64,000 bases of DNA from Guillardia theta CCMP2712 (lineage: Eukaryota > Protista > Cryptophyta): the NCBI RefSeq assembly GCF_000315625.1, contig NW_005434508.1, positions 1 to 64,000 on the forward strand. Direction: 5' to 3'. Positions 13,949 to 64,000 of the stretch are shown piece by piece. Position 1 is the first letter of the stretch, and each line of letters begins with the position of its first letter. Both the position numbers and the translations under genes were made by a program. The notes below the pieces were generated by a model. The model did not search any database. It saw only the letters and a program-made list of their open reading frames with translations, and was not told the DNA's origin.

Positions 13949-16277
13949 CTACTTCGTCGAAGCGGCTTGCACTTGACAGTCAGGGCGTGATGGGCTGCAG
14001 GCCTTGAAGCAGACCGTTAGCATTTCACCATGTCGGCCAAAACCGTCTCACCTGACATAGATCTCGCAGGAGGAGAGTGTCTTGCATTGGATTCTTGCAC
14101 TCTCGCACTCACCTCGTCTTCGATCATCTGCCTTCCACGTCAGCACCTCCAGAGCTCGCAGCATCCCGAAGTTGCACTCCTGCCCCACCTTCCTGATCTC
14201 CGTGGAGGTCATGGAGTGCAGGCACCTCTCATAATCGAAATCGAAGGTCTTGAGGTTCATGTCAGGAATTTTCCTCCGATCCCCCGCAGCCTCACCTTGT
14301 CGCAGTCAGGCTCGCAGTTGGGGTCGTGCAGCTCTTGAAAAAATGGATGTTGGAGAGCCTGTCGAGACGAGCGAGTGAGAGAGGAGGAGGGCAGAAGGAG
14401 GAATCTTGCTGGATCTCTTGGAAAGGAGGAGGTTGTTTTCTGAGCGGGGGAGGTGGGGGGCGAGGGGGAAGGGGCGCGGAGGAGGTATGGGGGAGAAAGT
14501 GGGGACATATGAAGGGAAGGAGAGGGAGAGGGAGAGGGAGAGGGAGAGGGAGAGGGAGAGGGAGAGGAAGGGAGAAAGGGAGAGGGAGAGGGAGTGTGGC
14601 TTACAACGCCAGCCTTGGCCCTCTTCTTAGGGTTGAACTGAAGGAGCTGATGCAACAAGTCGATGGCCTCCTCGCTAGGGACGTGAGAGGACCAGTCAAA
14701 CTTCTTGTTGACCTCGACGACTGCAGCACTGTCAGCGTCCCAACATCAGCCCCCCGCCTCCTCCCACCCGACAGGAAGCGCACTGCGTTTTCGCACAGGT
14801 GTTCTTGATCCTCCCGGCTGGGTAAGCCAATCTTGCTGATCTGCAGCTTGATCATCCCAACATAGTCGTCCCCTGCCATCATCGCCAGTGTCAGGATGCT
14901 CGTGACTTGTTCATTCAAGTGTCGACCAGGGAAGGCGGGCTTCCTCAAGAAAAGCTCAGCCATGATGCAACCGACCTGCTCTATGGGTGAGCAGGCAATG
15001 AGATAGAAGTGCATGTCTTTTGTAGCAAGCACGACAGGAGAAGGAAGCAGAGAAAGCGTGAGAGAAGGAGTAGGACGAGGAGGACGGGGATGGCAAAGAG
15101 GAGAACATGAAGGACGAGGAGGAAGAAAGAAAAGGAGCACGGAGGAAAGGAGAAAAGAGAGGGGGAAGAGATGGGCAGCTGGCAGGAGAAGTTTGGAGGA
15201 GGGTGCTCCCCCCAACTCACTGCCCAGACGTCGATCGAGAAATCGTAGTCGAGAGAGCAGAGCAGGAGCTCAGGAGCTCGGTACCTTGAAACAAGGAGGT
15301 CACGGAAAGGTCGGAGGGACGGAGAGGAACGGGGGCTACCATCTCGTGACCACCTTCACTGTCAGTCGCTCTCCAAGCTGCGAGTCCACTGGCGACCTTG
15401 CCATCCCCTGAGCACGGACGTCAGGAGGGAAGGAGAGCAGGATCCGAGCAGGTGTGAGAGCTCGTGGAGAAGCAATAGCCGAGCGAGGAAGAGAGGAGGG
15501 AGATGATAAAGGAAGGGAAGGAAGGGATGGGACAGAGGTGGGAGGAGGTGAAAGTGGGAGGAACCGGAGGAAGCGAAGGAAAGGAGGAGGGAGGAAGTGA
15601 AAGAGGGAGGAAGCGGAGGAGGGGAGAAAGCGTCACATCATCTGTCTTACAAGGTCACAGATCTTGACGTCGCAGGCTGAGTTGACAAGAATGTTTCCGG
15701 GCTTGAGGTCGCGATGCATTACTTTGGCCGAGTGAAGGAACTTGAGGCCACGTAGGATCTGATACACAAAGAACTGAATGTGCTGGACGGTCAGGGGCTG
15801 CTTTGAGTAGATGACTGAGTGAAGACTGGTGTCCATCAGCTCCGTTACAAAGTACAGGTGCTTGTCCTTCCCGTCAATGAAGACATCCACAAGGGAAACG
15901 ATGTTGTCATGCCCGCTGAAGTGCTGCAGCATCTTCAGCTCTCGCAGGATCATCTTGGCAACGCTCTCCCTTATCTCCCCATCTGCATAGTCCTTGATCT
16001 TCTTGATCGCAACGGGCGAGCTGTCCTCGATGTTTCGTGCGGCGAACACTACCCCGTACTCTCCCTCCCCCACCACCCGATCGATCTCATACCTGCTCAA
16101 CACGTAGGAGGAGACTATGAAGCCTCCAGCTTCACTCCGTGACATGCTAGACACTCAGCAAGGTTGATGGACACGCGAGTGGATGAAGAAAGGAGGCAAA
16201 AAGGCCAGAACAAGACACATGAACAAGAAGAGCCGTGTGAGAGAATCTCAGCCCTTCTGCGTCAGAATCTCTTCCAT
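13949..16277 (-). CDS. Mitogen-activated protein kinase family member with atypical activation loop; multi-exon; ends approximate
   Basis: GEGEYG, VAIKKI, LRELKML, LTVQHIQFFVYQILRGLKFLHSAKVMHRDLKPGNILVNSACDVKICDL|GMAR..VVTRW|YRAPELLL..IDVWAVGCIMAEL..ALQHPFFQELHDP. Confidence 0.92.
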
Positions 16278-40451: not shown

Positions 40452-40564
40452 CGCGGCAAGTTGAAATCTCCTGTCAAGGAAATTTTCAGTCTCCAATCGT
40501 TTGTTGAATCCATCCCATGTAACGCGTGCTCCTCCCCCCCCCTTCTCTTTCTCTCTTTCTCTTT

Positions 40565-41100
40565 ATCTCCACCTCTACCTCTATCTCTATCGCTATCATT
40601 ATCGCTATCTCTTTCACTTTCTCAGTCTCGATCTTTACCTCGATCTCTTTCACTTTCCTTATCTCTACCTCTACCTCTACCTCTACCTCGATCTCTACCT
40701 CTACCTCTACCTCGATTTCTTCCACTTTCTCTTCCTCGATCTCGATCTGATCTGATCTGATCTCTTTGACTTTCACTTTCTCTATCTCTACCTCTACCTC
40801 TACCTCGATCTCTACCTCTACCTCTACCTCTACCTCTTCACTTTCTCTATCTCTATCTCTATCTCTACCTCTACCTCTTCACTTTCTCTATCTCTATCTC
40901 TATCTCTACCTCTACCTCTATCTCTACCTCTACCTCTACCTCTATCTCTGGCTCTACCTCTATCTCTGGCTCTACCTCTACCTCTACCTCTACCTCTACC
41001 TCTACCTCTACCTCTACCTCTACCTCTACCTCTACCTCTACCTCTACCTCTACCACTACCTCTACCTCGATCTCTTTCACTTTCTATATCTTCATCTCTA
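40565..41100. repeat. (TCTACC)/(TCTATC) hexamer satellite
   Basis: About 530 bp of near-continuous hexamer units in the divergent SDR/kinase intergenic region. Confidence 0.95.
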
Positions 41101-41519
41101 TATTTCTGTCTTGCCTCTTCTCTGTTTCTCTGCCCCTCCCTCCCTTCTCCCTCAATCCCACCGCAAGCGCCTTGTGCCTCGATCCTACTCCCGGGGCCCG
41201 GGCCGGCCCGGCGGCCCGGCCAATCCATAATGATACGTAAAACCGTAAAACTGATACGTCGGAGTCAGTTTTAAGGAACAGGAATCGTAGACGTCGCTTG
41301 TGAACAATGCAAAGCAAGATTCTACATCAACAAGCTGGCATGGGCATGTCCCGATTGCGGCATTTCTGTTGTTCAAGACACACATGACCCCTCTAAATGT
41401 GCCGATAGAGCACAGGAATCGAGGTATGGATGGGGAAGGTACTTCGGAGGACGAGATTACTGCTGTAACTGTGCTAAGAAGCATGGTTGGACTAGCTATG
41501 GCAAGTATGCTTGCAAACG

Positions 41520-42602
41520 ATGCAAGGAGAGGTCTTTGAAGAAAACTTTAACAACTTCAAAGGTCTCGAAGAATTTGACTCAAGTGGGTCCTTCAAGTCC
41601 GTCTATCGTGCAACTTGGAATCGCTCCAACGGAGATACGTCGTCTGTAGCTGTTCTACAAATCAAAGGAAGTGGATCTTATCTCCGAGACGCGTTCCAGC
41701 AGGAACTCAACGTCACATGCGAGCTTGGTCTTCACCCGAACCTTCTCAGGCTGCTTGCGATCACCAAAGAGCCAGCCTCTGGAGATTACTGTTTGGTCAC
41801 CGAGTTCGCATGCCATGGGTCCTTGAAGTCCATGCTCCTAAAGCTGTGGGAGTCCAGGAACACGATCAGTGCACTGCACAAGATATTGATTGCTCGCCAA
41901 ATCTGTGATGGGATGGTACAACTCGCCCTTCACAATGTGGTGCATCGTGATTTGGCGGCCAGAAACGTATTGGTGTTCTGCATGGATTCAATGAATCATC
42001 TTGACGTTCAGGTCAAGATAGCAGATTACGGTCTTTCGATCTTATCTAATTGTGGGTACTGCAACACCAATGGCGGGTCGATGGCAGGGAGCACAGCTCG
42101 CCCTATCAGGTGGATGGCGCCCGAGAGCATTCAACGAAGGCTATACTCGGAGCAGAGCGACGTTTGGGCGTTCGGCGTTACCATGTGGGAGATCTGGAGC
42201 TATGCGATGATGCCTTATGGGAGTGTAACCGACGATTGCACTGTTGGGTCAAAGATCGTCGATGGTGAACGACTTGCAAACCCTGATAATTGTCCAGCTG
42301 GAATTTATGCGATCATGCAGAAATGCTGGCAAGATACGAGGAAGGATCGCCCTACGTTCAAGGAACTCCAAAGATTGCTCCTGCTGCAATACGATGAAGC
42401 AGTCGTTGAGGAGAAGATGATATCCGTGCAGCTTGCAAGTGAAGAAGCTAAAGTGTGTGTGGTCTGCCAGACAGACCCTGCAATCTGGGCGCTATCGCCT
42501 TGTGGACACTTGTGTCTATGTGGGAACTGCAAGCAAGGAAGCGAAGCCAGACCTTGTCCCCTTTGTCGCGGCCAGCCCACAAGCCTGCTACGTATCTTTT
42601 GA
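41520..42602 (+). CDS. Intronless protein tyrosine kinase-family domain with a C-terminal C3HC4 RING finger
   Basis: HRDLAARN and PIRWMAPES (TK signatures), SDVWAFGVTMWEI, CW..RPTF; C-terminal CVVC..PCGHLCLCGNC..CPLCR..LRIF (IAP/Mind-bomb-type RING). Confidence 0.92.
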   Translation: MQGEVFEENFNNFKGLEEFDSSGSFKSVYRATWNRSNGDTSSVAVLQIKGSGSYLRDAFQQELNVTCELGLHPNLLRLLAITKEPASGDYCLVTEFACHGSLKSMLLKLWESRNTISALHKILIARQICDGMVQLALHNVVHRDLAARNVLVFCMDSMNHLDVQVKIADYGLSILSNCGYCNTNGGSMAGSTARPIRWMAPESIQRRLYSEQSDVWAFGVTMWEIWSYAMMPYGSVTDDCTVGSKIVDGERLANPDNCPAGIYAIMQKCWQDTRKDRPTFKELQRLLLLQYDEAVVEEKMISVQLASEEAKVCVVCQTDPAIWALSPCGHLCLCGNCKQGSEARPCPLCRGQPTSLLRIF

Positions 42603-43850
42603 AGCGTCACGGCGTGAAGCTGTTCGCTGTGACGGTGTCAGTGATCTGGCCTCAGGCCTCTCAGGCCAGAGACGATTGCATTTTAAGCGTTTAGTGGGCT
42701 GGGCCGGGGGACTGGTCTCCAAACTCAACTGATACCTTCACTGAGTCACTTAACTGCGCGCAGGGACAGCAGTCGGCAGGATGAGGGCCCTTGGTTCTTG
42801 CTGTCTTCTCTCTTCTCGCTGGCCTGTACGACAATGTCAGTGTCAAGCCTCCTCTACTCTCCTGATTGTCCTCGTATGATTTTTAAATCACATCGAAGCC
42901 TGGCTTTGAAGCTTGTGTTTCAACGGTTCCATTCTCTGGGAGTCCCTTCCGGATCATCTGACCTATCATCTGAGTCATGGCATGATCATCTGACATATCA
43001 TCTGAGTCATGGCATGATGCCGCCACTCGAACCGAGCAAGGTCGCGCGGCTGGAGATCAGCCTGATCCCGATTACTTCATCAGTTTGATGCCGCCGGGCC
43101 CGGGAATCCACTCTTTACTCACTAGCCAATTTTTTTAAACTTTTTTTTTGCAAACAGGTATTTTTTTCCCATTGTAATGTGTCATTACTACTCAACCGTA
43201 CGTTGACGGATAAGGCCGAAAGTTACTACCGTCGGTACGGCCCATACCGTACGCCTTGTAGTTTTTAACTTCCAAAGTTCAAGCTCACGCTAGTAGCCAA
43301 GTCACCCGGTAGGTCCCAGTGGTTCTCCCAGAGGGACCGGGGGGTGGGGGGTGTGACGCTGCTGTTGACCTCTGGGGAGTCGAACGGTCACTCGCTACCC
43401 GAGGTGAGCGCGGAGAGACGGTCGAAGGAGTCAGAAGTTAACTTCCGAAGTTAACAACAGTCTGTAGGCCCTCCCTCAAGAAGTCAGAGAGCCGTTACTG
43501 TACGGGTGGCTCACTCTAGTTCACGCGGGGTGGGGGGTACTGGATTGGCTAAATGAGGCGATCAGATGTTGGATCCGTTGTTGGTCGGTTAGGATAAGGA
43601 TGACCGTGACCTCGTCAATCTCAGCTCCTCATAACAATCTATCCTCGAACTCTCCCCTCGCACTCTCGCACCCCCTCTCCCTGCCACCCTCCCGTCTCCC
43701 TCCCCTTCCTCCCCTCTTTTGTCTTTCTTCCTGTTCCCATCTGCTTGCATCGCTGCTGTCTAGGTCGTCGCATTCCTCTCGGTCGCGTCTATCCCAAGCG
43801 GTTCTGGAACTTCTACCTGATACGACGAGCGTGTCCTCCTTTGAGACTCC

Positions 43851-55979: not shown

Positions 55980-57241
55980 ACTGGTGGAGTCAGCAGCGTG
56001 AGATCCAGAGGCACTCCGACTGGTCGAGCATACGAGGAGGAGCTTCAGTGGATGAGTACCATCGAGTTCAAGAGAACAGCAGCGCCAGCAGCCCGATCAT
56101 TCCCAGTGGCTTCAGAACATCGACTTGACTGCTTCAAGGCTTCTGTGTCAATCAGTTCCTTCTCCCTCTCAGTACATTCGAGCTCGATCTGCCTTTGTAT
56201 AACCCGCCCTTGCTCGCCCCTCCGTCCCTCTTCAATTCGCCTGTTACGCTCCTCACTTTGTGCCTGCCTCCCTGACACCAACTCTTCATACACCTCCCCC
56301 TCTTCTCATCCCTCTCCTCTTCTCTCCTCTCCTCTCCTCTCTCCCTCCTCTCAGTCTGCTCCTGTCCTTCACTCCCCTTTCTTGTTACATAGCGCTACCA
56401 TCCCCGACCGCAATACACTGCGACGGTTATTTCATCGTTACTTTCAACCAGCTATTTGTGCTGCCTTCTCTTTTATCCCGATTTACACCTGAGGCGGGCT
56501 TAGTTTGAAACTCCAACAACTGCGATTCTTTACTCAAGTCAGAAATCAGTGGCTGCAGTATTCAATGATTGGAGGCGCTCGGAACCCTCCCTCCAGTATT
56601 TGTCCCTGGCTCTCGGGGCCAGAGTGAGCCTCCGAGGCTCGGAGCGGCGAGTCAGGCTCGTAGCGGCCGCCAGTGCCGATGGCACCGAGCCTGAGAGCCA
56701 AATTGATTCAGTGATCGGCGGCTTCGCAGCCTGTAGGTTTCTTTCTGTGACTCAAAGTTAAGAAGTTAAAAATCAGTACGAGGACAATCAGGTCGAGGAG
56801 GCTTGACCCGTAGGATGATCAGGGTGTAGGAGTAACCGCGTTGGAGGCCCATGAGACTCGGTGACTTCAAACTTAGTTGGGGGGCGGCTCACTGAGTCAG
56901 TGCGATCAGAGCTTTCATCTCATATTCTTGAGGGAAAACAGCAAGTTAGAGATTTCTCAAACCAAAACACAATAACAATCATGGCCCTCAAGTGATCCCT
57001 GGACAGCTTCAATCAATCGTGCAGAAACAGGCGATGGTTGTATCAAGGTGTGTCAATGTTTATAAGAACATAAAGAAGGGTTTCTGTGAAAGGATGCTAA
57101 CACAAGCGCGCACGTAGATTGAAAAATATTTCTTTATGCAATATCATGGTTTGCATACCTGTCTGTGGCCTCGAGAAAAGATTTTCGAATGAATGAGCAC
57201 ATACCTTGCAAGCTTTGAACTTTGACAAACACGCGATGGAA

Positions 57242-57571
57242 TCATGGAGATTTGCTTAGCGTCGTCTGAATCAGATTTTCACACTCATGCTTCCACCTCT
57301 CCATCTCCCTTTCATCTTCGGTCAGCATGGGCTTACTAGTCTTCTGCGAGCTTTCTGTCTTGATAGGCGGCCTTGATCCTTGTGGCAGGGTGTCTCTGTT
57401 GGAAAGTAGCCCAGTCGCCTTTGACCATCGAGGAGGAGTGCCGAGAGGAGGAGAGTAGCTGGGCTGGAACTCGGACCTGTTGCTCAGCGGGACAGAGCCT
57501 GGTTTGTACATGAGCGACCGCCGACCTGTCGACTTTCTGCTAGCGCATTCGCAGCACATGGCGTTTAGCAT
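57242..57571 (-). CDS. Small hypothetical protein (109 aa)
   Basis: ATG-started intronless ORF, not low-complexity, with an N-terminal Cys cluster and a charged C-terminal helix; no homology recognised. Confidence 0.4.
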   Translation of the reverse strand: MLNAMCCECASRKSTGRRSLMYKPGSVPLSNRSEFQPSYSPPLGTPPRWSKATGLLSNRDTLPQGSRPPIKTESSQKTSKPMLTEDEREMERWKHECENLIQTTLSKSP

Positions 57572-58106
57572 TGCGACAAACCTCTGCTTGAAAGGGCGAA
57601 CGACAATTCAAGAGGGTAGGGTAGTGCATAAAGGGGTCCTAATGTCAGATAACAATGCTCTTATATCAGGGTGGGTTGTTCAGGTGAGGCTGTGGAGGGG
57701 TGGGGGGTACGACAAGTTCTGTCGGGGGTCACTGATCGTACTAGTGGGTGTTGGAGATAAGTAAATTTCAGTACCTGGATTCACATGTGACTAAAATGTG
57801 TAGGTTGCAAGAGTGTCACCTACGCGAACGCTCCGACACAGAGTCGGTCTCAACGCCGGGCCCGGGCTCCGGAGTCCGGGGCCGGCCGGTGACTCCGGGC
57901 CGAGTGACCGGCGACTCAGCCTGACTTGACTTACTAGTTACTGGCCCGATCCTGATCGGACTGCGACAGATCTGTTCGCTCAGCGGCTAGACATAGCTCT
58001 AATCGTACGGAAGTTCCAGTGATCCGACCTGCAGTGCAGTTCCTGCTCTAGAGCCGGGTTCCAGGAGCCGGGAAGGGAGAGTCCGACGGTCATTGTTTGC
58101 TTCCAG

Positions 58107-59010
58107 GCCCCCAGCGTTCCTAACACTCCTCTGCTCTGCTCTGCTCTGCTCTTCTCCTCTCTTTCTCTCTGCCCATGAGCCCCCACCTCCCCTGAGACAG
58201 GCCCATTCTGTTTTACATGCAATTGCTAGTTCTCCGTTTTGATCACCCTTCTCGTCTTGTCACCTCAGTGCTCAGTCTCCTTCCCTCTTCCTGAGTCTCT
58301 CACCCTAACCCCGCTCTCTCTCCTCCTCCTCACTTTCTCCGCAGGCTCTCGTAGGAGCTCTGCAGCGAGCCCTGCCAAAAGAGTTCTTCGATCCTGATGA
58401 GGTCGCATATCCTCCTTCTTCTCCTCCAGCACCTTCTCTAGCTGCTATTCTGCTCAATCGCCTGCTTCTCTTCCTCGTCCTCCTCATGCTCCCCCTTCTC
58501 TTGCTGCTCCACTAGCTCCTCCATCTCCTCCATCTCCACCTGCTCCTCCTTCTCTTGCTGACCCTCTTGCTGCTTCCTTGCCTGCCTCCTCCTTCAGTGT
58601 GTCTGTCTCGCTTGTTCTTCTCCTGCTCCTCCGCCATCTCCTCGCTTCATCTCTCTGCAGCAAGTGTGCTCCTGCTGATCCCGTGTAGGCGCTCATGGAC
58701 ACGACCTACCTGGACCCGCAGGTGAGGAAGGAGAAGAGAATCGAAGAGAGCAGGAGGAAGAGACTGCAGCGGGGCCGTTGATACCAACGATACGGCTGGA
58801 TGAGTCGAGATCGCTGAGTAGACAGAGGAGGAGGATGGAGAAGGCAGAGGAGGAGGAGAAGCGGGAGGAGGAGGATCGAATCAGAGTTGACAGTCGATGT
58901 AACAGGTGCGGCTTGTCTGCTACCTTGGGAAGAGATTTGCTGGCGTTCGTCATGTGTATTGTCGGCCAGAGCCAGAGAAAGAGGTTGAGCGCTGGTCAAC
59001 GTCAGAATGA
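58107..59010 (+). pseudogene. 5'-truncated duplicate of the fibrillin-like gene (last three exons plus a broken exon)
   Basis: Exons ALVGALQRALPKEFFDPDE, ALMDTTYLDPQ and VRLV..STSE* are intact; the upstream exon is cut to APSVP followed by TAA; no 5' half. Confidence 0.75.
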
Positions 59011-59106
59011 CATGATGAGAGGAGGAGAGAGAAAACAAGCAAGAGACTGGAAGCATCATGAAATGATTTACAAGAAAACAAACTTAGCATGTCAACATCT
59101 ACGTCT

Positions 59107-62100
59107 TCAAACGTGTCCTGACAGCAGCTCACTGGCTTTCTTCGCGACCTCTCCAAACACATCTATCAAGGTCGTCGTGACATCCGACCAGGCTGACTCC
59201 CCGCGTCTCTCGCTCGCGGCATCGCTGACTGTCTGCCTGTCGATGGCTGTGGAGGACAAGGTTGGCCGTTTCAGCCCTCTCCTCCCGCTGCTGCACTCCT
59301 CGATCGCCAGCGTATCCCAGCCGGCCTCCACGTCAAACTGATGGAAGACGAAGGAGACGGAGGAGGTGCCCGCTGGAGCGATGCTCCAAGAGAACGTCGT
59401 GGACGTCTGGTAGTTCCCTGGCCCATCCGTCACCATCCCCTGCAGGCTGTCGATCGCCCCTGTCCCTCCCCAGCTGCAGTCGTACACCCGCGTCGACCCC
59501 GCATAGATGGCCTTGAAGCCCTCTCGCCTCACCGAGTAGTCCGTCGACATCCTCACTCGCATGTACCCCGTCGAGCTCACAAGCGGCCCCGGCATCGTCG
59601 ACCCCGTCAGGCTCGCAAGCTGCGTGGAGGAGGAGCAGGAGGCGTCGCTGCACTCGTCGACGTACACGTAGTCGTAGCCGTACTCCATGTCCAGCTGGGT
59701 GAAGACGAGGGTGACGCTCGAGGCGCCGGCGGGAGCCAAGATCCAGCTGCAGGAGGCGCTGTTGCTGTAGAGCCCGACCCCGTCGGAGAGACCGCCGTAG
59801 TCGGCTTGGAGGGCGACGGCGGCGGGGGAGGCGCAGGCGTCAGCGTTGTAGGAGGGCTCAGGGCCCCAGCGAGCAAGGAAGCTTGCTTGAGCATCGGAGG
59901 TGAGGGAGACCTTGAGGATGCTGGTAGAGGAAGTGATGAGCGGTATCGTCGACGTGCTTGAGTAGGGGCTGCCGCTTATGATCGAGCAAGTCATGCCCGA
60001 GCTCGGGGGCGTCGTAGGCGCTGGGCTCGTAGTAGGAGCTGGGCTGGTAGTAGGAGCTTGGCTTGTGGTGGCAGCACGGCTGGTAGTAGGAGCTGGGCTG
60101 GTGGTGGGAGCACGGCTGGTAGTAGGCGCTGGGCTTGTGGTGGGAGCACGGCTGGTAGTAGGCGCTGGGCTTGTAGTGGGAGCTGGGCTGGTGGTAGGAG
60201 CTGGGCTGGTGGTAGGAGCTGGGCTGGTAGTAGGCACTGGGCTTGTGGTGGGAGCACGGCTGGTAGTAGGCGCTGGGCTTGTGGTGGGAGCACGGCTGGT
60301 AGTAGGCGCTGGGCTTGTGGTGGGAGCACGGCTGGTAGTAGGAGCTGGGCTGGTAGACGAGGTTGTTGGAGCTGGGCTTGTGGTGGGAGCACGGCTGGTG
60401 GACGAGGGGGGGATACACTGTCCGAGGTACAAGCGATCGAAGTTCTGCTCGATGTTCATCTCGAGGAAAGTGAGGCGGAGGCTGGAGGAGGAGGGAGGCT
60501 GAACCACAAACGAGCAGCGCAGGTTGTTGCCGTAGGCGCCGATCCCGTCGGAGAGGAGGCCGAAGCTCTCCTGCACCAGCCCACTGCTGGAGCAGTCGTG
60601 GAGGCGAGTGAGGAAGACAGCTCTGAAGCCCGGCGCTGTGACTGAGCCGTCGGAAGTGAAGACAACCTTCATGATGCCCGTGGAGGAGACGAGGAGGTCG
60701 GGGACGGCAGCCCCTGTGAACGGGCTTCCCTGCACCTGCACCGGAGAGGAGCAGGCGGCGGTAGAGCACTCGTAGACGTACACGAAGTCCCATCCGTTCT
60801 CCACGTTGAAGTCGAGGAACTTGAGGTAGACCTGCTGGGCAAGAGGAGGGGCGAGGATCCAAGTCTTGACCCAGTTGTTGTCGTAGTTCCCGTCCCCATC
60901 GGTCACGATCCCCTCAGATGCTGACAGCGTCACCACCTGGTTGCTCGTCCCGTTGCTGGACGGCAGCGACGAGGAGTCGCCGAACATGGCCAAGAAGCCC
61001 TTGCCCCCGATGCTTCCGTCCGAGACGAACTCGACCACGACGGGAGTCGGTCGAAGAGCAGCAGCTGGAGGCGTCGTGCCGGAGTAGGGGCTGCCAGAGT
61101 CGTAGGTGACTTGCTGGCAGACGGACGGGCTGATGAGGGGAGGAGCTGGGACACTGCAGTCCTGTCCTTGGAAGCCGATGTCGCAGGAGCAGGTGCCGAG
61201 CTTGCAGGTTCCATGTGACGAGCAGCCGTTGGGGCAAGTGAGGGCTGGGCAAGTCACCTCCTCCACGTCCCCCGTGACCACCAGCGAGAACTTCTGCGAG
61301 CTCCCTTGGATGTCGAGCCCTTCCACCATCACTCGGTACATGCCGCCCGTAGCGTTGGAGATGGTGACCTGCTCGCAGTTGTTGGCGTCGTCCTTGACCG
61401 GGTTGCCGCTGCTCGTGAGGTTGTTGCCGAACAAGAGCCTCCTGCTCGGGTCCTGCACCAAGAGGTTCAGGTCATGCATCAGCGTCCGCTGGCTCCCGAC
61501 AGGAGCAGGAGGATCCGTCCAGACGAGAGATGCGCGGAAGACAAGGGAGGACGGGCGGCTGGGGGCGAGGAAGCAGAAGTGTCTGGTCTGCTGGTCCTCG
61601 ACGACCTCCCGGTCATGCACCTTGAGCTTGAAGGGAGTGGAAGGGCCAAAGTAGAGGACGGACTCGAGGTCGACCCGTCCGAACCCTTGCGACACGTGAG
61701 GGAGCGAGGGAGGAAGCCTCCACGTCGACGACTCCGTGTACCACATGGGCTGACCCGCATGGATCATGATGGCCTTGACCAGCGACGCCGACGGCGCCAT
61801 GGCGGCGGAAGCGTTGCGGGCCCCGGAGGAGAGGAAGCCTTCGCGGAAGTACTGACGCACTAGCGCTGACGCGCCTGCGCATGTCGGGGTGGCCATGGAG
61901 GTGCCGCTCATCTCGGCGATGGAGCACTGGAAGGAGGTCAGGGTCCCGTCCGAGTAGGCCGACCGGATGCTCTCTCCCGGGCACACGATGTCCGGCTTGA
62001 ACCGTCCGTCCGGGGTTGGCCCGCGGGAGGAGAAGTCGACGAGGCCAGTCCTCTGCTTGTCATGCGCCGTCCCCGTGTATCCGTCGTAGTCTTGGTAGGC

Positions 62101-63488
62101 AGCGAGCGTGTTGGCTCCTGCTCCCACTGCCAGGATGTTCTTGGCCGTGGCGGGGGAGCCGATGGTTCCTGCTCCTGGCCCAGAGTTACCGGCAGCCACG
62201 AGGATGAGGAAGTCGTCGTGGTCGAAGATGAACTGATCCATCTCCTGCGCCGTGCTGGTGTAGGCCGAGGTCGACGACCCCCACGAGTTGGAGTGCAGGT
62301 TGGCCCCGACGGCGAAGGCATGAGGGAACAAGTCCGTGTTGAGGTCGTCGGGGAGCCACAGGCTGCTGCCGTCAGAGGAGATGTCGTCGAATGAGAGCTT
62401 TGCTTCCGGCGCTCCTCCGTTGTAGGAGACGGTGTAGTCGCTGGACAGAGAGTTGCCCAGGATCGAGCCGACGACATGTGTTCCATGGCCGTAGGAGGTG
62501 TCGCCCACGTTGGTGGAGGCGAAGTAGCGGTAGGAGACGATCTTCCTATGGTTCATGTTGACGCAGTTTGCGGGGGCTCCCAGGCCCTGACACGTCTTCA
62601 CCTGCTGGTTGGGGTCCTGGAAGAAACAGCTGTCGTAGTCCACCCCAGTGTCCGCACACCCGACGATCTCGCCGGAGCCCAGCAGGCCCTGGCTCCAGAG
62701 CTTGTTTTGCGTTCCATCATTGGACTGCACGGCCATGGACTAGGTGGGCAAGTCAGGAGCAGGAGGGAGGAAGCAGCTGCACTCACCGCATACTTGTTGT
62801 TGATGATGAAAGTCGGCCGCTCCTCGATACAGACCACCAGCGGCTGCTCTGCCAGCCAGGCCCACACAGCGTCTTCCTGTGCGACGTCCACAACCACCAC
62901 CACCTTGCTCGTGCTGGCCCATCGCATGGTGAAGGAGGAAGGAGGTACAACCTTGCGGAGGTCTCGCTGCCATGACATCAGCGTGCTCGCAAACGTTCCT
63001 CGCGTCTCGTTCGTCACTGCCACTTGCACGTCCAACGTGGCCGTGGCCCCTGCCGCCGCTCTGACCTGAGCAGCACGAGACGCTGTCTTGGCCTCCGCCG
63101 GCATGGCAAACACGCCCTCGACCCCCCGGAGGGAATGGACGGCCTCTGCGTGCGCGGCATCGAGCGCCATGAGGTAGGTGTCGTGAGGATAGTACTGCAT
63201 GTACTTGCCCGCCGCGATCGACCTCAAGCTGGCGACCACTGCTCTGGGGTCGGACACCCGAACAACGTAGAGGCTCAAGCTAGAGGACATGGAGCGAGTA
63301 GAGCTTTTGGACTTGTCATCGAAGACAAGCTTCCTCAAAGGAACGTCCTTCATGTTTAGAACGTGCCATGGGCGGCCAGTAAGCCTCTTGACACTGAGAT
63401 CATCATCCCGGTTGCTTGCTTTCCCCCAGCACGAGGAGAGCAGAAATGACACGAGAAAGATCAGACACTTCGTCTCAGACGGCGGCAT
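59107..63488 (-). CDS. Secreted subtilase-EGF-CUB protease, short copy (3 full plus 2 half CUB domains); intron 62740-62786
   Basis: Near-identical to 43851-49666 with an intact triad; exon 2 ORF is 1209 aa versus 1687 aa. Confidence 0.95.
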
Positions 63489-64000
63489 GGAGTCTCAAAG
63501 GAGGACACGCTCGTCGTATCAGGTAGAAGTTCCAGAACCGCTTGGGATAGACGCGACCGAGAGGAATGCGACGACCTAGACAGCAGCGATGCAAGCAGAT
63601 GGGAACAGGAAGAAAGACAAAAGAGGGGAGGAAGGGGAGGGAGACGGGAGGGTGGCAGGGAGAGGGGGTGCGAGAGTGCGAGGGGAGAGTTCGAGGATAG
63701 ATTGTTATGAGGAGCTTGATCTATCGGGGAACATTGACGAGATCACGGTGCTTGCTGTTGGCTTTACTGCTATTTTACTACACCCGATCCTTATCCTAAC
63801 CGACAAAATGACCATTCGGTCTTCCATGTAGCAAATGCGGTAACTTCTCAGGCTACCCCCACCCCACTAAACCCTATCAACGGGACCCCTACCCCACCAC
63901 TTCTTTGTTCCGAACAGCCTAATCCCTACAGCAACTTAGCAACTGAAACATAAAACCGTGAAACTGAGGCTTCACCGCCTCCTCACTTCACTCTTGAGCC

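What the first reader, a model, noticed from the sequence alone, without database searches (positions are those of the whole stretch)
41520..42602. Tyrosine kinase with WNK-style catalytic-lysine relocation, fused to a RING E3
Seen: the beta3 VAxK lysine is absent (VAVLQ, 41646-41660), while the Gly-loop reads SGSFKSVY (Lys codon 41595-41597). Established: WNK Ser/Thr kinases lack the beta3 Lys and use the Lys in G-x-GSFKTVY instead. Yet the catalytic and P+1 loops (HRDLAARN, PIRWMAPES) are tyrosine-kinase type, with DYG and the alphaC Glu (QQE) intact. Inference: an independently evolved 'with-no-K' tyrosine kinase outside animals that motif scanners would miscall a pseudokinase, coupling phosphotyrosine and ubiquitin signalling in one ~360-aa chain.
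Basis: partly seen in the sequence, partly recalled or inferred. Interest (0 to 1): 0.8.

Follow-up and report, generated by a model that had tools for sequence, protein, structure and literature searches.

The report
Tyrosine-type kinase–RING with shifted lysine
An algal (cryptophyte) gene encodes a tyrosine-kinase-type enzyme fused to a ubiquitin-ligase RING domain whose essential ATP-binding lysine sits where human WNK kinases have it, and about a hundred relatives from many algae share this, so it looks like an undescribed, independently evolved "with-no-lysine" kinase family.

Summary
ORF 41520-42602 (+) encodes 360 aa: a PK_Tyr_Ser-Thr kinase domain plus a C-terminal C3HC4 RING. Leu46 occupies the beta3 lysine site. 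Lys26 replaces the third glycine of GxGxxG, the same position as the catalytic lysine of WNK1 (G-loop EIGRGSFKTVYKG in PDB chains).

This is not a one-off. Of 163 homologues covering both sites:
- 97 have the G-loop Lys and no beta3 Lys;
- 59 are canonical;
- none has both;
- 7 have neither.

With the two sites masked, every shifted sequence falls in one clade (SH-aLRT 92-96) and no canonical member lies inside it. That clade keeps the alphaC Glu, the HRD Asp, the catalytic-loop Asn and the DFG/DYG Asp in 96-99% of members, so it looks like an active enzyme rather than a decaying pseudokinase. The nearby QIK lysine is Arg in 75/97.

Named members come from cryptophytes, haptophytes, a chrysophyte, green algae and a colpodellid. 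In the shifted clade 70/97 carry a U-box or RING, against 0/59 canonical relatives.

Best sequence and structure matches are animal tyrosine kinases, not WNK. Catalysis, tyrosine specificity and E3 activity are inferred, not shown. No paper describing the family was found.

The parts
41520..42602 (+). Complete intronless ORF, 360 aa plus stop: TK-type kinase, linker helix, C-terminal RING.
   Evidence: Contigs of two public runs are collinear with it, with no differences and no joints inside the ORF. The genome's own gene call, P0001, covers only residues 22-284.
41583..42377 (+). Protein kinase domain as matched by Pfam PF07714 (residues 22-286). The model starts beta1 at residue 13.
   Evidence: 3.7e-65; AF2 pLDDT 91.9. 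Foldseek top 50 are all animal TKs.
41580..41597 (+). Glycine-rich loop SSGSFK. Lys26 (41595-41597) replaces the third Gly and is the proposed catalytic lysine.
   Evidence: K in 95/101 of the clade. One search shows the WNK1 G-loop EIGRGSFKTVYKG in the same register.
41646..41666 (+). Beta3 strand VAVLQIK. Leu46 (41655-41657) sits at the canonical lysine site. Lys49 (41664-41666) is the +3 position.
   Evidence: At the beta3 site the family has L 67, M 9, Q 8, V 5 and never K. The +3 position is R in 75/97.
41703..41705 (+). AlphaC glutamate, Glu62.
   Evidence: E in 94/97. (helix 56-69).
41943..41966 (+). Catalytic loop HRDLAARN, the tyrosine-kinase type, with Asp144 and Asn149.
   Evidence: D 93/97, N 96/97. 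PMC4342544 uses this motif as a TK criterion.
42024..42128 (+). Activation segment, from DYG (169-171) to the P+1 loop PIRWMAPES (195-203). It contains Tyr180, and residues 179-190 are predicted disordered.
   Evidence: Asp169 is conserved in 96/97.
42357..42446 (+). Long helix (residues 280-309) linking the kinase C-lobe to the RING.
   Evidence: DSSP H280-309.
42456..42599 (+). IAP-type C3HC4 RING: ligands C313, C316, C328, H330, C334, C337, C346, C349. It has CPLCR with Arg350 directly after the last Cys, and the tail ends ...LLRIF.
   Evidence: PF13920, 41.1 bits. best PDB hits: CGRRF1 3.4e-9, cIAP1/2, MGRN1, XIAP, MDM2, BIRC7..

Best explanation
This is a cytosolic, catalytically competent protein kinase of tyrosine-kinase type. 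It belongs to a previously undescribed algal/protist clade in which the ATP-anchoring lysine moved once from strand beta3 (PKA Lys72 position, here Leu46) to the start of strand beta2 (PKA Gly55 position, here Lys26). The same shift is known in WNK kinases and in POMK.

Inferred mechanism:
1. Lys26 reaches under the glycine loop to bind the ATP phosphates and to pair with alphaC Glu62.
2. Asp144, Asn149 and Asp169 act as in any kinase.
3. The HRDLAARN and PIRWMAPE loops favour tyrosine substrates.
4. A 30-residue helix connects the kinase to an IAP-type C-terminal RING, which probably dimerises and recruits an E2~ubiquitin.

One chain would therefore both phosphorylate and ubiquitinate. Either it acts on shared substrates, or autophosphorylation gates its own E3 activity or turnover.

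Shown here: the sequence anatomy, the family-wide conservation, the single origin, the TK-like rather than WNK-like affinity, and the exclusive association with E3 domains. Inferred: catalysis through Lys26, tyrosine specificity, RING dimerisation, E3 activity and the coupling between the two activities.
For: - Position equivalence with WNK1's catalytic lysine; PMC1821047; PMC5346417.
- Mutual exclusivity among homologues: 97 shifted, 59 canonical, 0 with both lysines.
- One clade with the two trait columns masked: SH-aLRT 96 with 95 rows and 92 with 161 rows. No canonical sequence lies inside it.
- Within the shifted set, Glu62 is kept in 94/97, Asp144 in 93/97, Asn149 in 96/97 and Asp169 in 96/97, at only 28-60% overall identity.
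- Lys49 is Arg in 75/97.
- A confident kinase fold, with Lys26 at the beta2 start.
- TK affinity: PF07714 scores 220 bits against 102 for PF00069; top PDB sequence and Foldseek hits are all TKs.
- In POMK, swapping the lysine back (K93G/S108K) keeps activity, which shows the two sites are interchangeable (PMC5142810).
- The RING has all ligands, is above Pfam's cutoff and is closest to active IAP/CGRRF1/MDM2-type RINGs.
- An E3 domain is present in 70/97 shifted relatives and 0/59 canonical ones.
Against: - No biochemical data exist for any member.
- The shift happened once, so the 97:0 table is one evolutionary event plus conservation. It is not independent co-variation.
- A few paralogues do show decay: HGD or HRG in place of HRD, and HCD in some. 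Six clade members lost the G-loop Lys (to N, R or Q). Part of the family may therefore be pseudokinases.
- TK-versus-TKL placement was not tested with outgroups.
- Transcription of this particular copy is unproven. The runs that hold it are only guessed to be RNA, and one true RNA run read at 6% gave no reads on the gene.
Confidence: 0.65

Rival explanations
1. Pseudokinase scaffold. The kinase domain lost its beta3 lysine and no longer transfers phosphate. It serves as a substrate- or nucleotide-binding module that targets the RING/U-box E3. The G-loop lysine would be conserved for structural or nucleotide-binding reasons only.
For: It formally lacks one of the three canonical residues. Some paralogues degrade HRD (P0004/5 HGD; P0013/14 HRG; P0036/40 HCD). 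Several clade members lost the G-loop Lys too. No activity data exist.
Against: Glu62, Asp144, Asn149 and Asp169 are kept in 96-99% of 97 sequences that are otherwise only 28-60% identical. The compensating Lys lies at exactly the position proven catalytic in WNK1 and POMK.
Confidence: 0.2
2. Active kinase that uses another basic residue instead of Lys26. Candidates are Lys49 of the QIK motif, or the residue next to position 46.
For: The window protein does have Lys49 three residues after the canonical site. The +1 position is K or R in 56/97 relatives.
Against: Position 49 is Arg in 75/97 and Lys in only 9/97. The same position is Lys in 38/43 canonical TKs, where it is not catalytic. In the window protein the +1 residue is Gln. 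On a beta strand, residues +1 and +3 face away from the side that carries the canonical lysine (inference from strand geometry).
Confidence: 0.04
3. Active, but a Ser/Thr or dual-specificity kinase of the TKL type that merely converged on TK-like motifs. It would then not be part of phosphotyrosine signalling.
For: The clade lies outside Holozoa. Its weakly supported sister sequences include a HRDIKPSN-type kinase. The short G-loop segment alone best matches B-Raf and LysM receptor kinases. No TKL outgroup analysis could be run.
Against: HRDLAARN and P-I-R-W-M-A-P-E are both present and conserved. The best full-length sequence and structure hits are TKs. The nearest named non-family homologues are choanoflagellate and metazoan TKs.
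Confidence: 0.3
4. Gene-model artefact: the RING is a separate gene or exon, or this copy is a dead paralogue.
For: The genome's own gene call stops before the RING. Transcription of this copy is not demonstrated.
Against: There is one uninterrupted 360-codon frame with all catalytic residues and Zn ligands intact. The same kinase-RING layout occurs in Hanusia transcripts and 21 other relatives. The model joins the domains by a confident helix.
Confidence: 0.05

Closest known systems
WNK1-4 (with-no-lysine Ser/Thr kinases)
   Same: The lysine sits at the third-Gly position of the glycine loop, at the start of beta2, and beta3 carries a non-lysine. The G-loop motif is near-identical: WNK1 reads IGRGSFKTVY, family member P0042 has the same ten residues, and the window protein has GSFKSVY.
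   Different: The catalytic loop is HRDLAARN (TK type), not the Ser/Thr type. It has DYG, not DLG. Beta3 carries Leu, not Cys (the Cys is from my own knowledge). The N-lobe and the whole domain match TKs rather than WNK. It has a RING instead of WNK's regulatory regions. Chloride sensing is untested.
POMK / SgK196 (protein O-mannose kinase)
   Same: A second known case of the beta3-to-beta2 lysine migration. Mutagenesis shows the two positions are interchangeable (PMC5142810).
   Different: POMK has also moved its DFG and HRD equivalents, is a luminal glycan kinase, and is an animal protein. In the window protein everything except the lysine is canonical.
CAK-chloro subfamily of choline/aminoglycoside-like kinases
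   Same: The positive charge shifted from position 72 (Met) to position 55 (Arg) (PMC1821047). Family members P0067 and P0068 likewise carry Arg at position 55.
   Different: These are small-molecule kinase-like bacterial and plastid proteins, not ePKs, and they lose Glu91.
Holozoan cytoplasmic and receptor tyrosine kinases (ABL, SRC, FAK, EGFR, KIT)
   Same: These are the best sequence matches (E down to 5e-42) and structure matches (TM up to 0.91 on the target). They share HRDLAARN, PxxWxAPE and the CW...RPxF motif.
   Different: They keep Gly55 and Lys72 and carry SH2/SH3 or receptor domains: 21/59 canonical relatives have SH2 and 0/59 have an E3 domain. The window family is from algae and other protists.
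IAP/CGRRF1/MDM2-type C-terminal RING E3s, and the Cbl-TK partnership
   Same: The RING is of the zf-C3HC4_3 type, with CPxCR and a short tail ending in an aromatic residue, as in cIAP (...VRTF). Cbl RINGs are weaker hits.
   Different: Here the RING is fused in cis to the kinase, rather than being recruited to a phosphorylated kinase.
Plant kinase-U-box (class IV PUB) and RING-kinase KEG proteins (from my own knowledge, not tested here)
   Same: A kinase and an E3 domain in one polypeptide.
   Different: The plant proteins have RLCK/IRAK-like Ser/Thr kinase domains with a canonical beta3 lysine.

Membership tests
WNK kinase family | Catalytic Lys in the glycine loop (PKA position 55) and no Lys in beta3 (position 72). 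| tested here: met
   PMC1821047.
WNK kinase family | Closest sequence and structure relatives are WNK/NRBP, with a Ser/Thr-type catalytic loop and a DLG motif. | tested here: not met
   The top 60 PDB sequence hits and top 50 Foldseek hits are all TKs. The N-lobe alone finds no WNK at E<=1. The protein has HRDLAARN and DYG.
WNK kinase family | Chloride binding at the vacated beta3 site that inhibits autophosphorylation. | not testable with these tools
   Needs biochemistry or a structure. The property is described in PMC5346417.
Tyrosine kinase (TK) group | Catalytic-loop motif HRDLAARN/HRDLRAAN. | tested here: met
   Residues 142-149. The motif is conserved in the family. The criterion is stated in PMC4342544.
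Tyrosine kinase (TK) group | P+1 loop P-(I/V)-(K/R)-W-x-A-P-E. | tested here: met
   PIRWMAPE at 195-202. The use of this motif as a criterion is from my own knowledge.
Tyrosine kinase (TK) group | Placement inside TK, away from TKL and other groups, in a kinome phylogeny with curated references. | not tested
   No TKL or WNK reference sequences could be brought in by reference. The trees contain only TK-like sequences and are unrooted.
Tyrosine kinase (TK) group | Phosphorylates tyrosine. | not testable with these tools
   Needs an enzyme assay.
RING-type E3 ligase (zf-C3HC4_3, IAP-like) | Eight Zn ligands in C3HC4 spacing and a Pfam score above the gathering threshold. | tested here: met
   C313, C316, C328, H330, C334, C337, C346, C349. 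PF13920 scores 41.1 bits against a cutoff of 27. CGRRF1 and cIAP are the best PDB hits.
RING-type E3 ligase (zf-C3HC4_3, IAP-like) | E2 binding and ubiquitin-transfer activity, and dimerisation through the C-terminal tail. | not testable with these tools
   Arg350 after the last Cys and the C-terminal ...RIF are consistent with this by analogy (role of these residues from my own knowledge).
Pseudokinase (sequence definition) | Lacks at least one of the beta3 Lys, the HRD Asp or the DFG Asp. | tested here: met
   Leu46 at the beta3 site. The formal definition is met in the same way as by WNK.
Pseudokinase (functional) | Relaxed conservation of the remaining catalytic residues. | tested here: not met
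   Glu62, Asp144, Asn149 and Asp169 are kept in 96-99% of 97 members.

The most novel reading that the evidence does not exclude
The clade is an ancient, pan-algal family of genuinely tyrosine-specific kinases that are catalytically driven by the beta2 lysine. As in WNK, the vacated hydrophobic beta3 site (Leu/Met) would serve as a binding pocket for an anion or other small ligand, making these proteins ion- or osmo-sensing kinases. Their autophosphorylation would switch the fused RING/U-box ligase in cis. This would be a self-contained phosphotyrosine-to-ubiquitin signalling module that arose outside animals.
Probability: 0.12. Interest if true: 0.85.

Novelty: new variant of a known kind. 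Interest (0 to 1): 0.66.

Why it matters
Reviews still describe the lysine placement of WNK as unique among functional eukaryotic protein kinases (PMC13686953, PMC1821047). POMK is the only other experimentally supported case. A large, conserved clade with the same shift in a tyrosine-kinase-type scaffold would matter in four ways.

1. It would show that the position 72-to-55 lysine migration is a recurrent, viable solution rather than a curiosity.
2. It would rescue about a hundred or more algal proteins from automatic "pseudokinase", "hypothetical" or "partial" labels.
3. It would add a non-holozoan lineage of TK-like enzymes to the debate on the origin of phosphotyrosine signalling.
4. It would provide a natural kinase-E3 fusion in which crosstalk between phosphorylation and ubiquitination can be studied in one polypeptide.

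It also makes testable whether freeing the beta3 site generally creates a regulatory ligand pocket, as chloride binding does in WNK.

Tried and rejected
- **WNK-derived N-lobe (gene conversion or domain swap).** Rejected. The N-lobe alone (95 aa) finds only TKs in the PDB and no WNK at E<=1. WNK1 appears only for a 20-48-aa G-loop peptide, at E 0.17-1.4.
- **QIK lysine as the catalytic residue.** Rejected on conservation.
- **Treating the 97:0:59 table as independent co-variation.** Rejected. Fisher p was 5e-23 on the first 96 sequences, but the trees show a single origin.
- **Expression test by reads.** Inconclusive. Contigs of runs X1 and X2 are collinear with the ORF, but their RNA status is only a guess, and the contig ends coincide with flanking repeats. 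The one certain RNA run (X6, 6% read) gave reads only on a downstream repeat.
- **Measuring the Lys26-Glu62 distance.** Not possible, because model coordinates are not exposed to scripts.
- **ESM Atlas look-up of the window protein itself.** Paralogue P0004 was used instead.
- **Kinome tree with TKL and WNK outgroups.** Not done, because no reference sequences were available by reference and typing them from memory was avoided.
- **The large representative-protein search.** The word-index searches were sufficient.
- **Literature searches.** The eight literature searches turned up no description of this family.

Full report
**The sequence.** Window 41520-42602 (+) is one uninterrupted ORF of 360 codons plus TGA.
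- G-loop SSGSFK is residues 21-26, with the Lys26 codon AAG at 41595-41597.
- Beta3 VAVLQIK is residues 43-49 (41646-41666), with Leu46 at 41655-41657.
- QQE ends at Glu62. HRDLAARN is 142-149, DYG 169-171 and PIRWMAPES 195-203.
- The RING runs from C313 to C349.

Pfam scores PK_Tyr_Ser-Thr at 3.7e-65 (220 bits) against 102 bits for the generic Pkinase model. It scores zf-C3HC4_3 at 1.6e-10, which is 41.1 bits against a cutoff of 27.

**Assignment of the two key positions.** HMMER alignments to the Src-Abl ancestor, ABL1 and EGFR place Leu46 on the VAxK lysine. They place Lys26 on the third glycine of GxGxxG, and Lys49 on the second, non-catalytic lysine of the TK motif VAVKTLK. An AlphaFold2 model built on 84 sequences is confident (mean pLDDT 91.9, pTM 0.85). 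In it Lys26 is the first residue of beta2 (26-34), Leu46 lies in beta3 (40-48) and Glu62 in alphaC (56-69). Only activation-loop residues 179-190 are disordered.

WNK1 chains in the PDB read EIGRGSFKTVYKG. Family member P0042 has the identical ten residues IGRGSFKTVY. The lysine is therefore at exactly the WNK position. [quoted passage not shown]

**Homologues.** The word-index search found the window's own partial gene call (P0001, 263 aa, kinase core only). It also found many paralogues or orthologues from Guillardia theta and Hanusia phi at 48-60% identity, and then a long tail of unnamed metatranscriptome proteins. A profile search added Emiliania huxleyi, Chrysochromulina, Tetraselmis and others. 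Cluster look-ups added Dinobryon, Alphamonas edax and Pyramimonas obovata.

Among 163 sequences covering both sites:
- 97 have Lys at the G-loop site and no Lys at beta3 (Leu 67, Met 9, Gln 8, Val 5, others 8);
- 59 are canonical (Gly/Ser/Thr plus Lys);
- none has both lysines;
- 7 have neither, of which 2 carry Arg at the G-loop site.

In the 97 shifted sequences, Glu62 is kept in 94, Asp144 in 93, Asn149 in 96 and Asp169 in 96. Overall identity to the window protein is only 28-60%. Position 49 (the QIK lysine) is Arg in 75 and Lys in 9.

**Phylogeny.** Maximum-likelihood trees of the kinase domain were built with the two trait columns masked. All shifted sequences, plus the six clade members that later lost the G-loop lysine, fall in a single clade with no canonical member inside. 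Support is SH-aLRT 96 with 95 rows under LG+C20 and 92 with 161 rows under LG+G4.

The shift therefore arose once and was never reverted in this sample. The striking 2x2 table reflects one event followed by strong conservation, not repeated co-variation. These are quick searches, and the root is unknown. The sister group (canonical P0035, P0064, P0233 plus a long-branched Ser/Thr-like sequence) is weakly placed.

**Not a WNK.**
- The 60 best PDB sequence matches are all tyrosine kinases, with E from 2e-64 to 2e-36.
- The 50 best Foldseek matches are EGFR, KIT, ABL, FAK, TRK, CSF1R, PYK2, MER and ACK1.
- The isolated N-lobe finds TKs and no WNK at E<=1.

The catalytic loop HRDLAARN is the motif used to tell TKs from Ser/Thr kinases (PMC4342544), and the P+1 loop is also TK-type. 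Formal placement against TKL outgroups could not be done.

**The E3 part.** The RING has all eight ligands. Arg350 lies directly after the last Cys, and the tail ends ...LLRIF. The best solved relatives are CGRRF1 (3.4e-9), cIAP1/2, MGRN1, XIAP, MDM2, BIRC7, MUL1, MYLIP and, more weakly, CBL.

Across the shifted clade, 48/97 proteins carry a U-box, 22/97 a C3HC4 RING and 8 a ubiquitin domain. Many of the remaining proteins are fragments. Among the 59 canonical relatives none has an E3 domain and 21 have SH2. Kinase-E3 fusion is thus a hallmark of the same clade that carries the lysine shift.

**Precedents and literature.** A 2026 review still calls the WNK placement unique (PMC13686953). POMK is a second proven case. 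Its K93G/S108K swap retains, and even improves, activity (PMC5142810; PMC10211241). CAK-chloro kinases show Met72/Arg55. The eight full-text literature searches found no description of a TK-type or E3-fused family with this feature.

**Mechanism proposed.** This is an active kinase in which Lys26 substitutes for the beta3 lysine, probably tyrosine-directed. It is coupled through a 30-residue helix (280-309) to a probably dimeric IAP-type RING. Dimerisation would also favour trans-autophosphorylation, with Tyr180 as a candidate site. These steps are inferences. A pseudokinase scaffold (about 0.2) and Ser/Thr or dual specificity (about 0.3, not exclusive of activity) remain open.

**Gene model and expression.** Contigs from two public runs match the ORF with no differences and no joints inside it, consistent with an intronless gene. 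A MAPK-like gene elsewhere in the window is split by introns. Whether those runs are RNA is unknown, and the one certain RNA run gave no reads on the gene at 6% sampling. Related Hanusia and MMETSP transcripts show that the family is expressed in cryptophytes.

Noticed in passing
window 40500-41230: A roughly 700-bp CT/GA-rich microsatellite-like array lies immediately upstream of the gene. It translates as LSLSLS / EVEVEV / YLYLYL in all frames.
   Followed up: no
window 42835-42876: A short, very high-copy dispersed element lies just downstream of the gene's 3' end. Its word depth is about 3,250 in run X2 and about 420 in X1, against 5-10 for the gene. It has many different flanks, and it is the only place hit by RNA run X6. 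It may relate to the dispersed element noted by others at 56750-64000.
   Followed up: no
window 41300-41539: An upstream ORF in another frame contains ATGs at 41498 and 41507 and overlaps the kinase start codon at 41520. It is a possible uORF if the 5' UTR starts near 41279, as the X1 contig does.
   Followed up: no
window 15633-16154 (-) and downstream exons to about 14260: A MAPK-like CMGC kinase gene is split by introns. It has a canonical GEGEYG glycine loop and a VAIKK beta3 lysine. It serves as an in-window contrast to the shifted-lysine kinase.
   Followed up: partly
homologues P0043, P0205, P0213; P0067, P0068; P0208: These are secondary variants inside the shifted clade. Three have Asn at the G-loop site together with an unusual VAAARR / VAASIR beta3. 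Two have Arg at the G-loop site, like CAK-chloro kinases. One has Gln. They may be pseudokinases or yet another charge relocation.
   Followed up: partly
homologues P0199, P0018, P0174, P0170, P0198, P0172: The shifted kinase domain is also found fused to a caspase-like peptidase C14 domain, WD40 repeats, ankyrin repeats, WW, PDZ, and ubiquitin plus U-box.
   Followed up: no
ESM Atlas clusters near paralogue P0004: The kinase+U-box (92 members) and kinase+ZZ (65 members) clusters have Rotifera as the commonest recorded phylum. A kinase+RING cluster is labelled Haptophyta, and one kinase-only cluster Nucleocytoviricota. Whether these carry the lysine shift, or reflect transfer or contamination, was not checked.
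   Followed up: no
window 41583-42371 (gene call P0001): The genome's existing protein model covers only the Pfam kinase core (263 aa). It omits the first 21 residues and the whole linker and RING. Several Guillardia 'partial' models of paralogues look truncated in the same way.
   Followed up: partly
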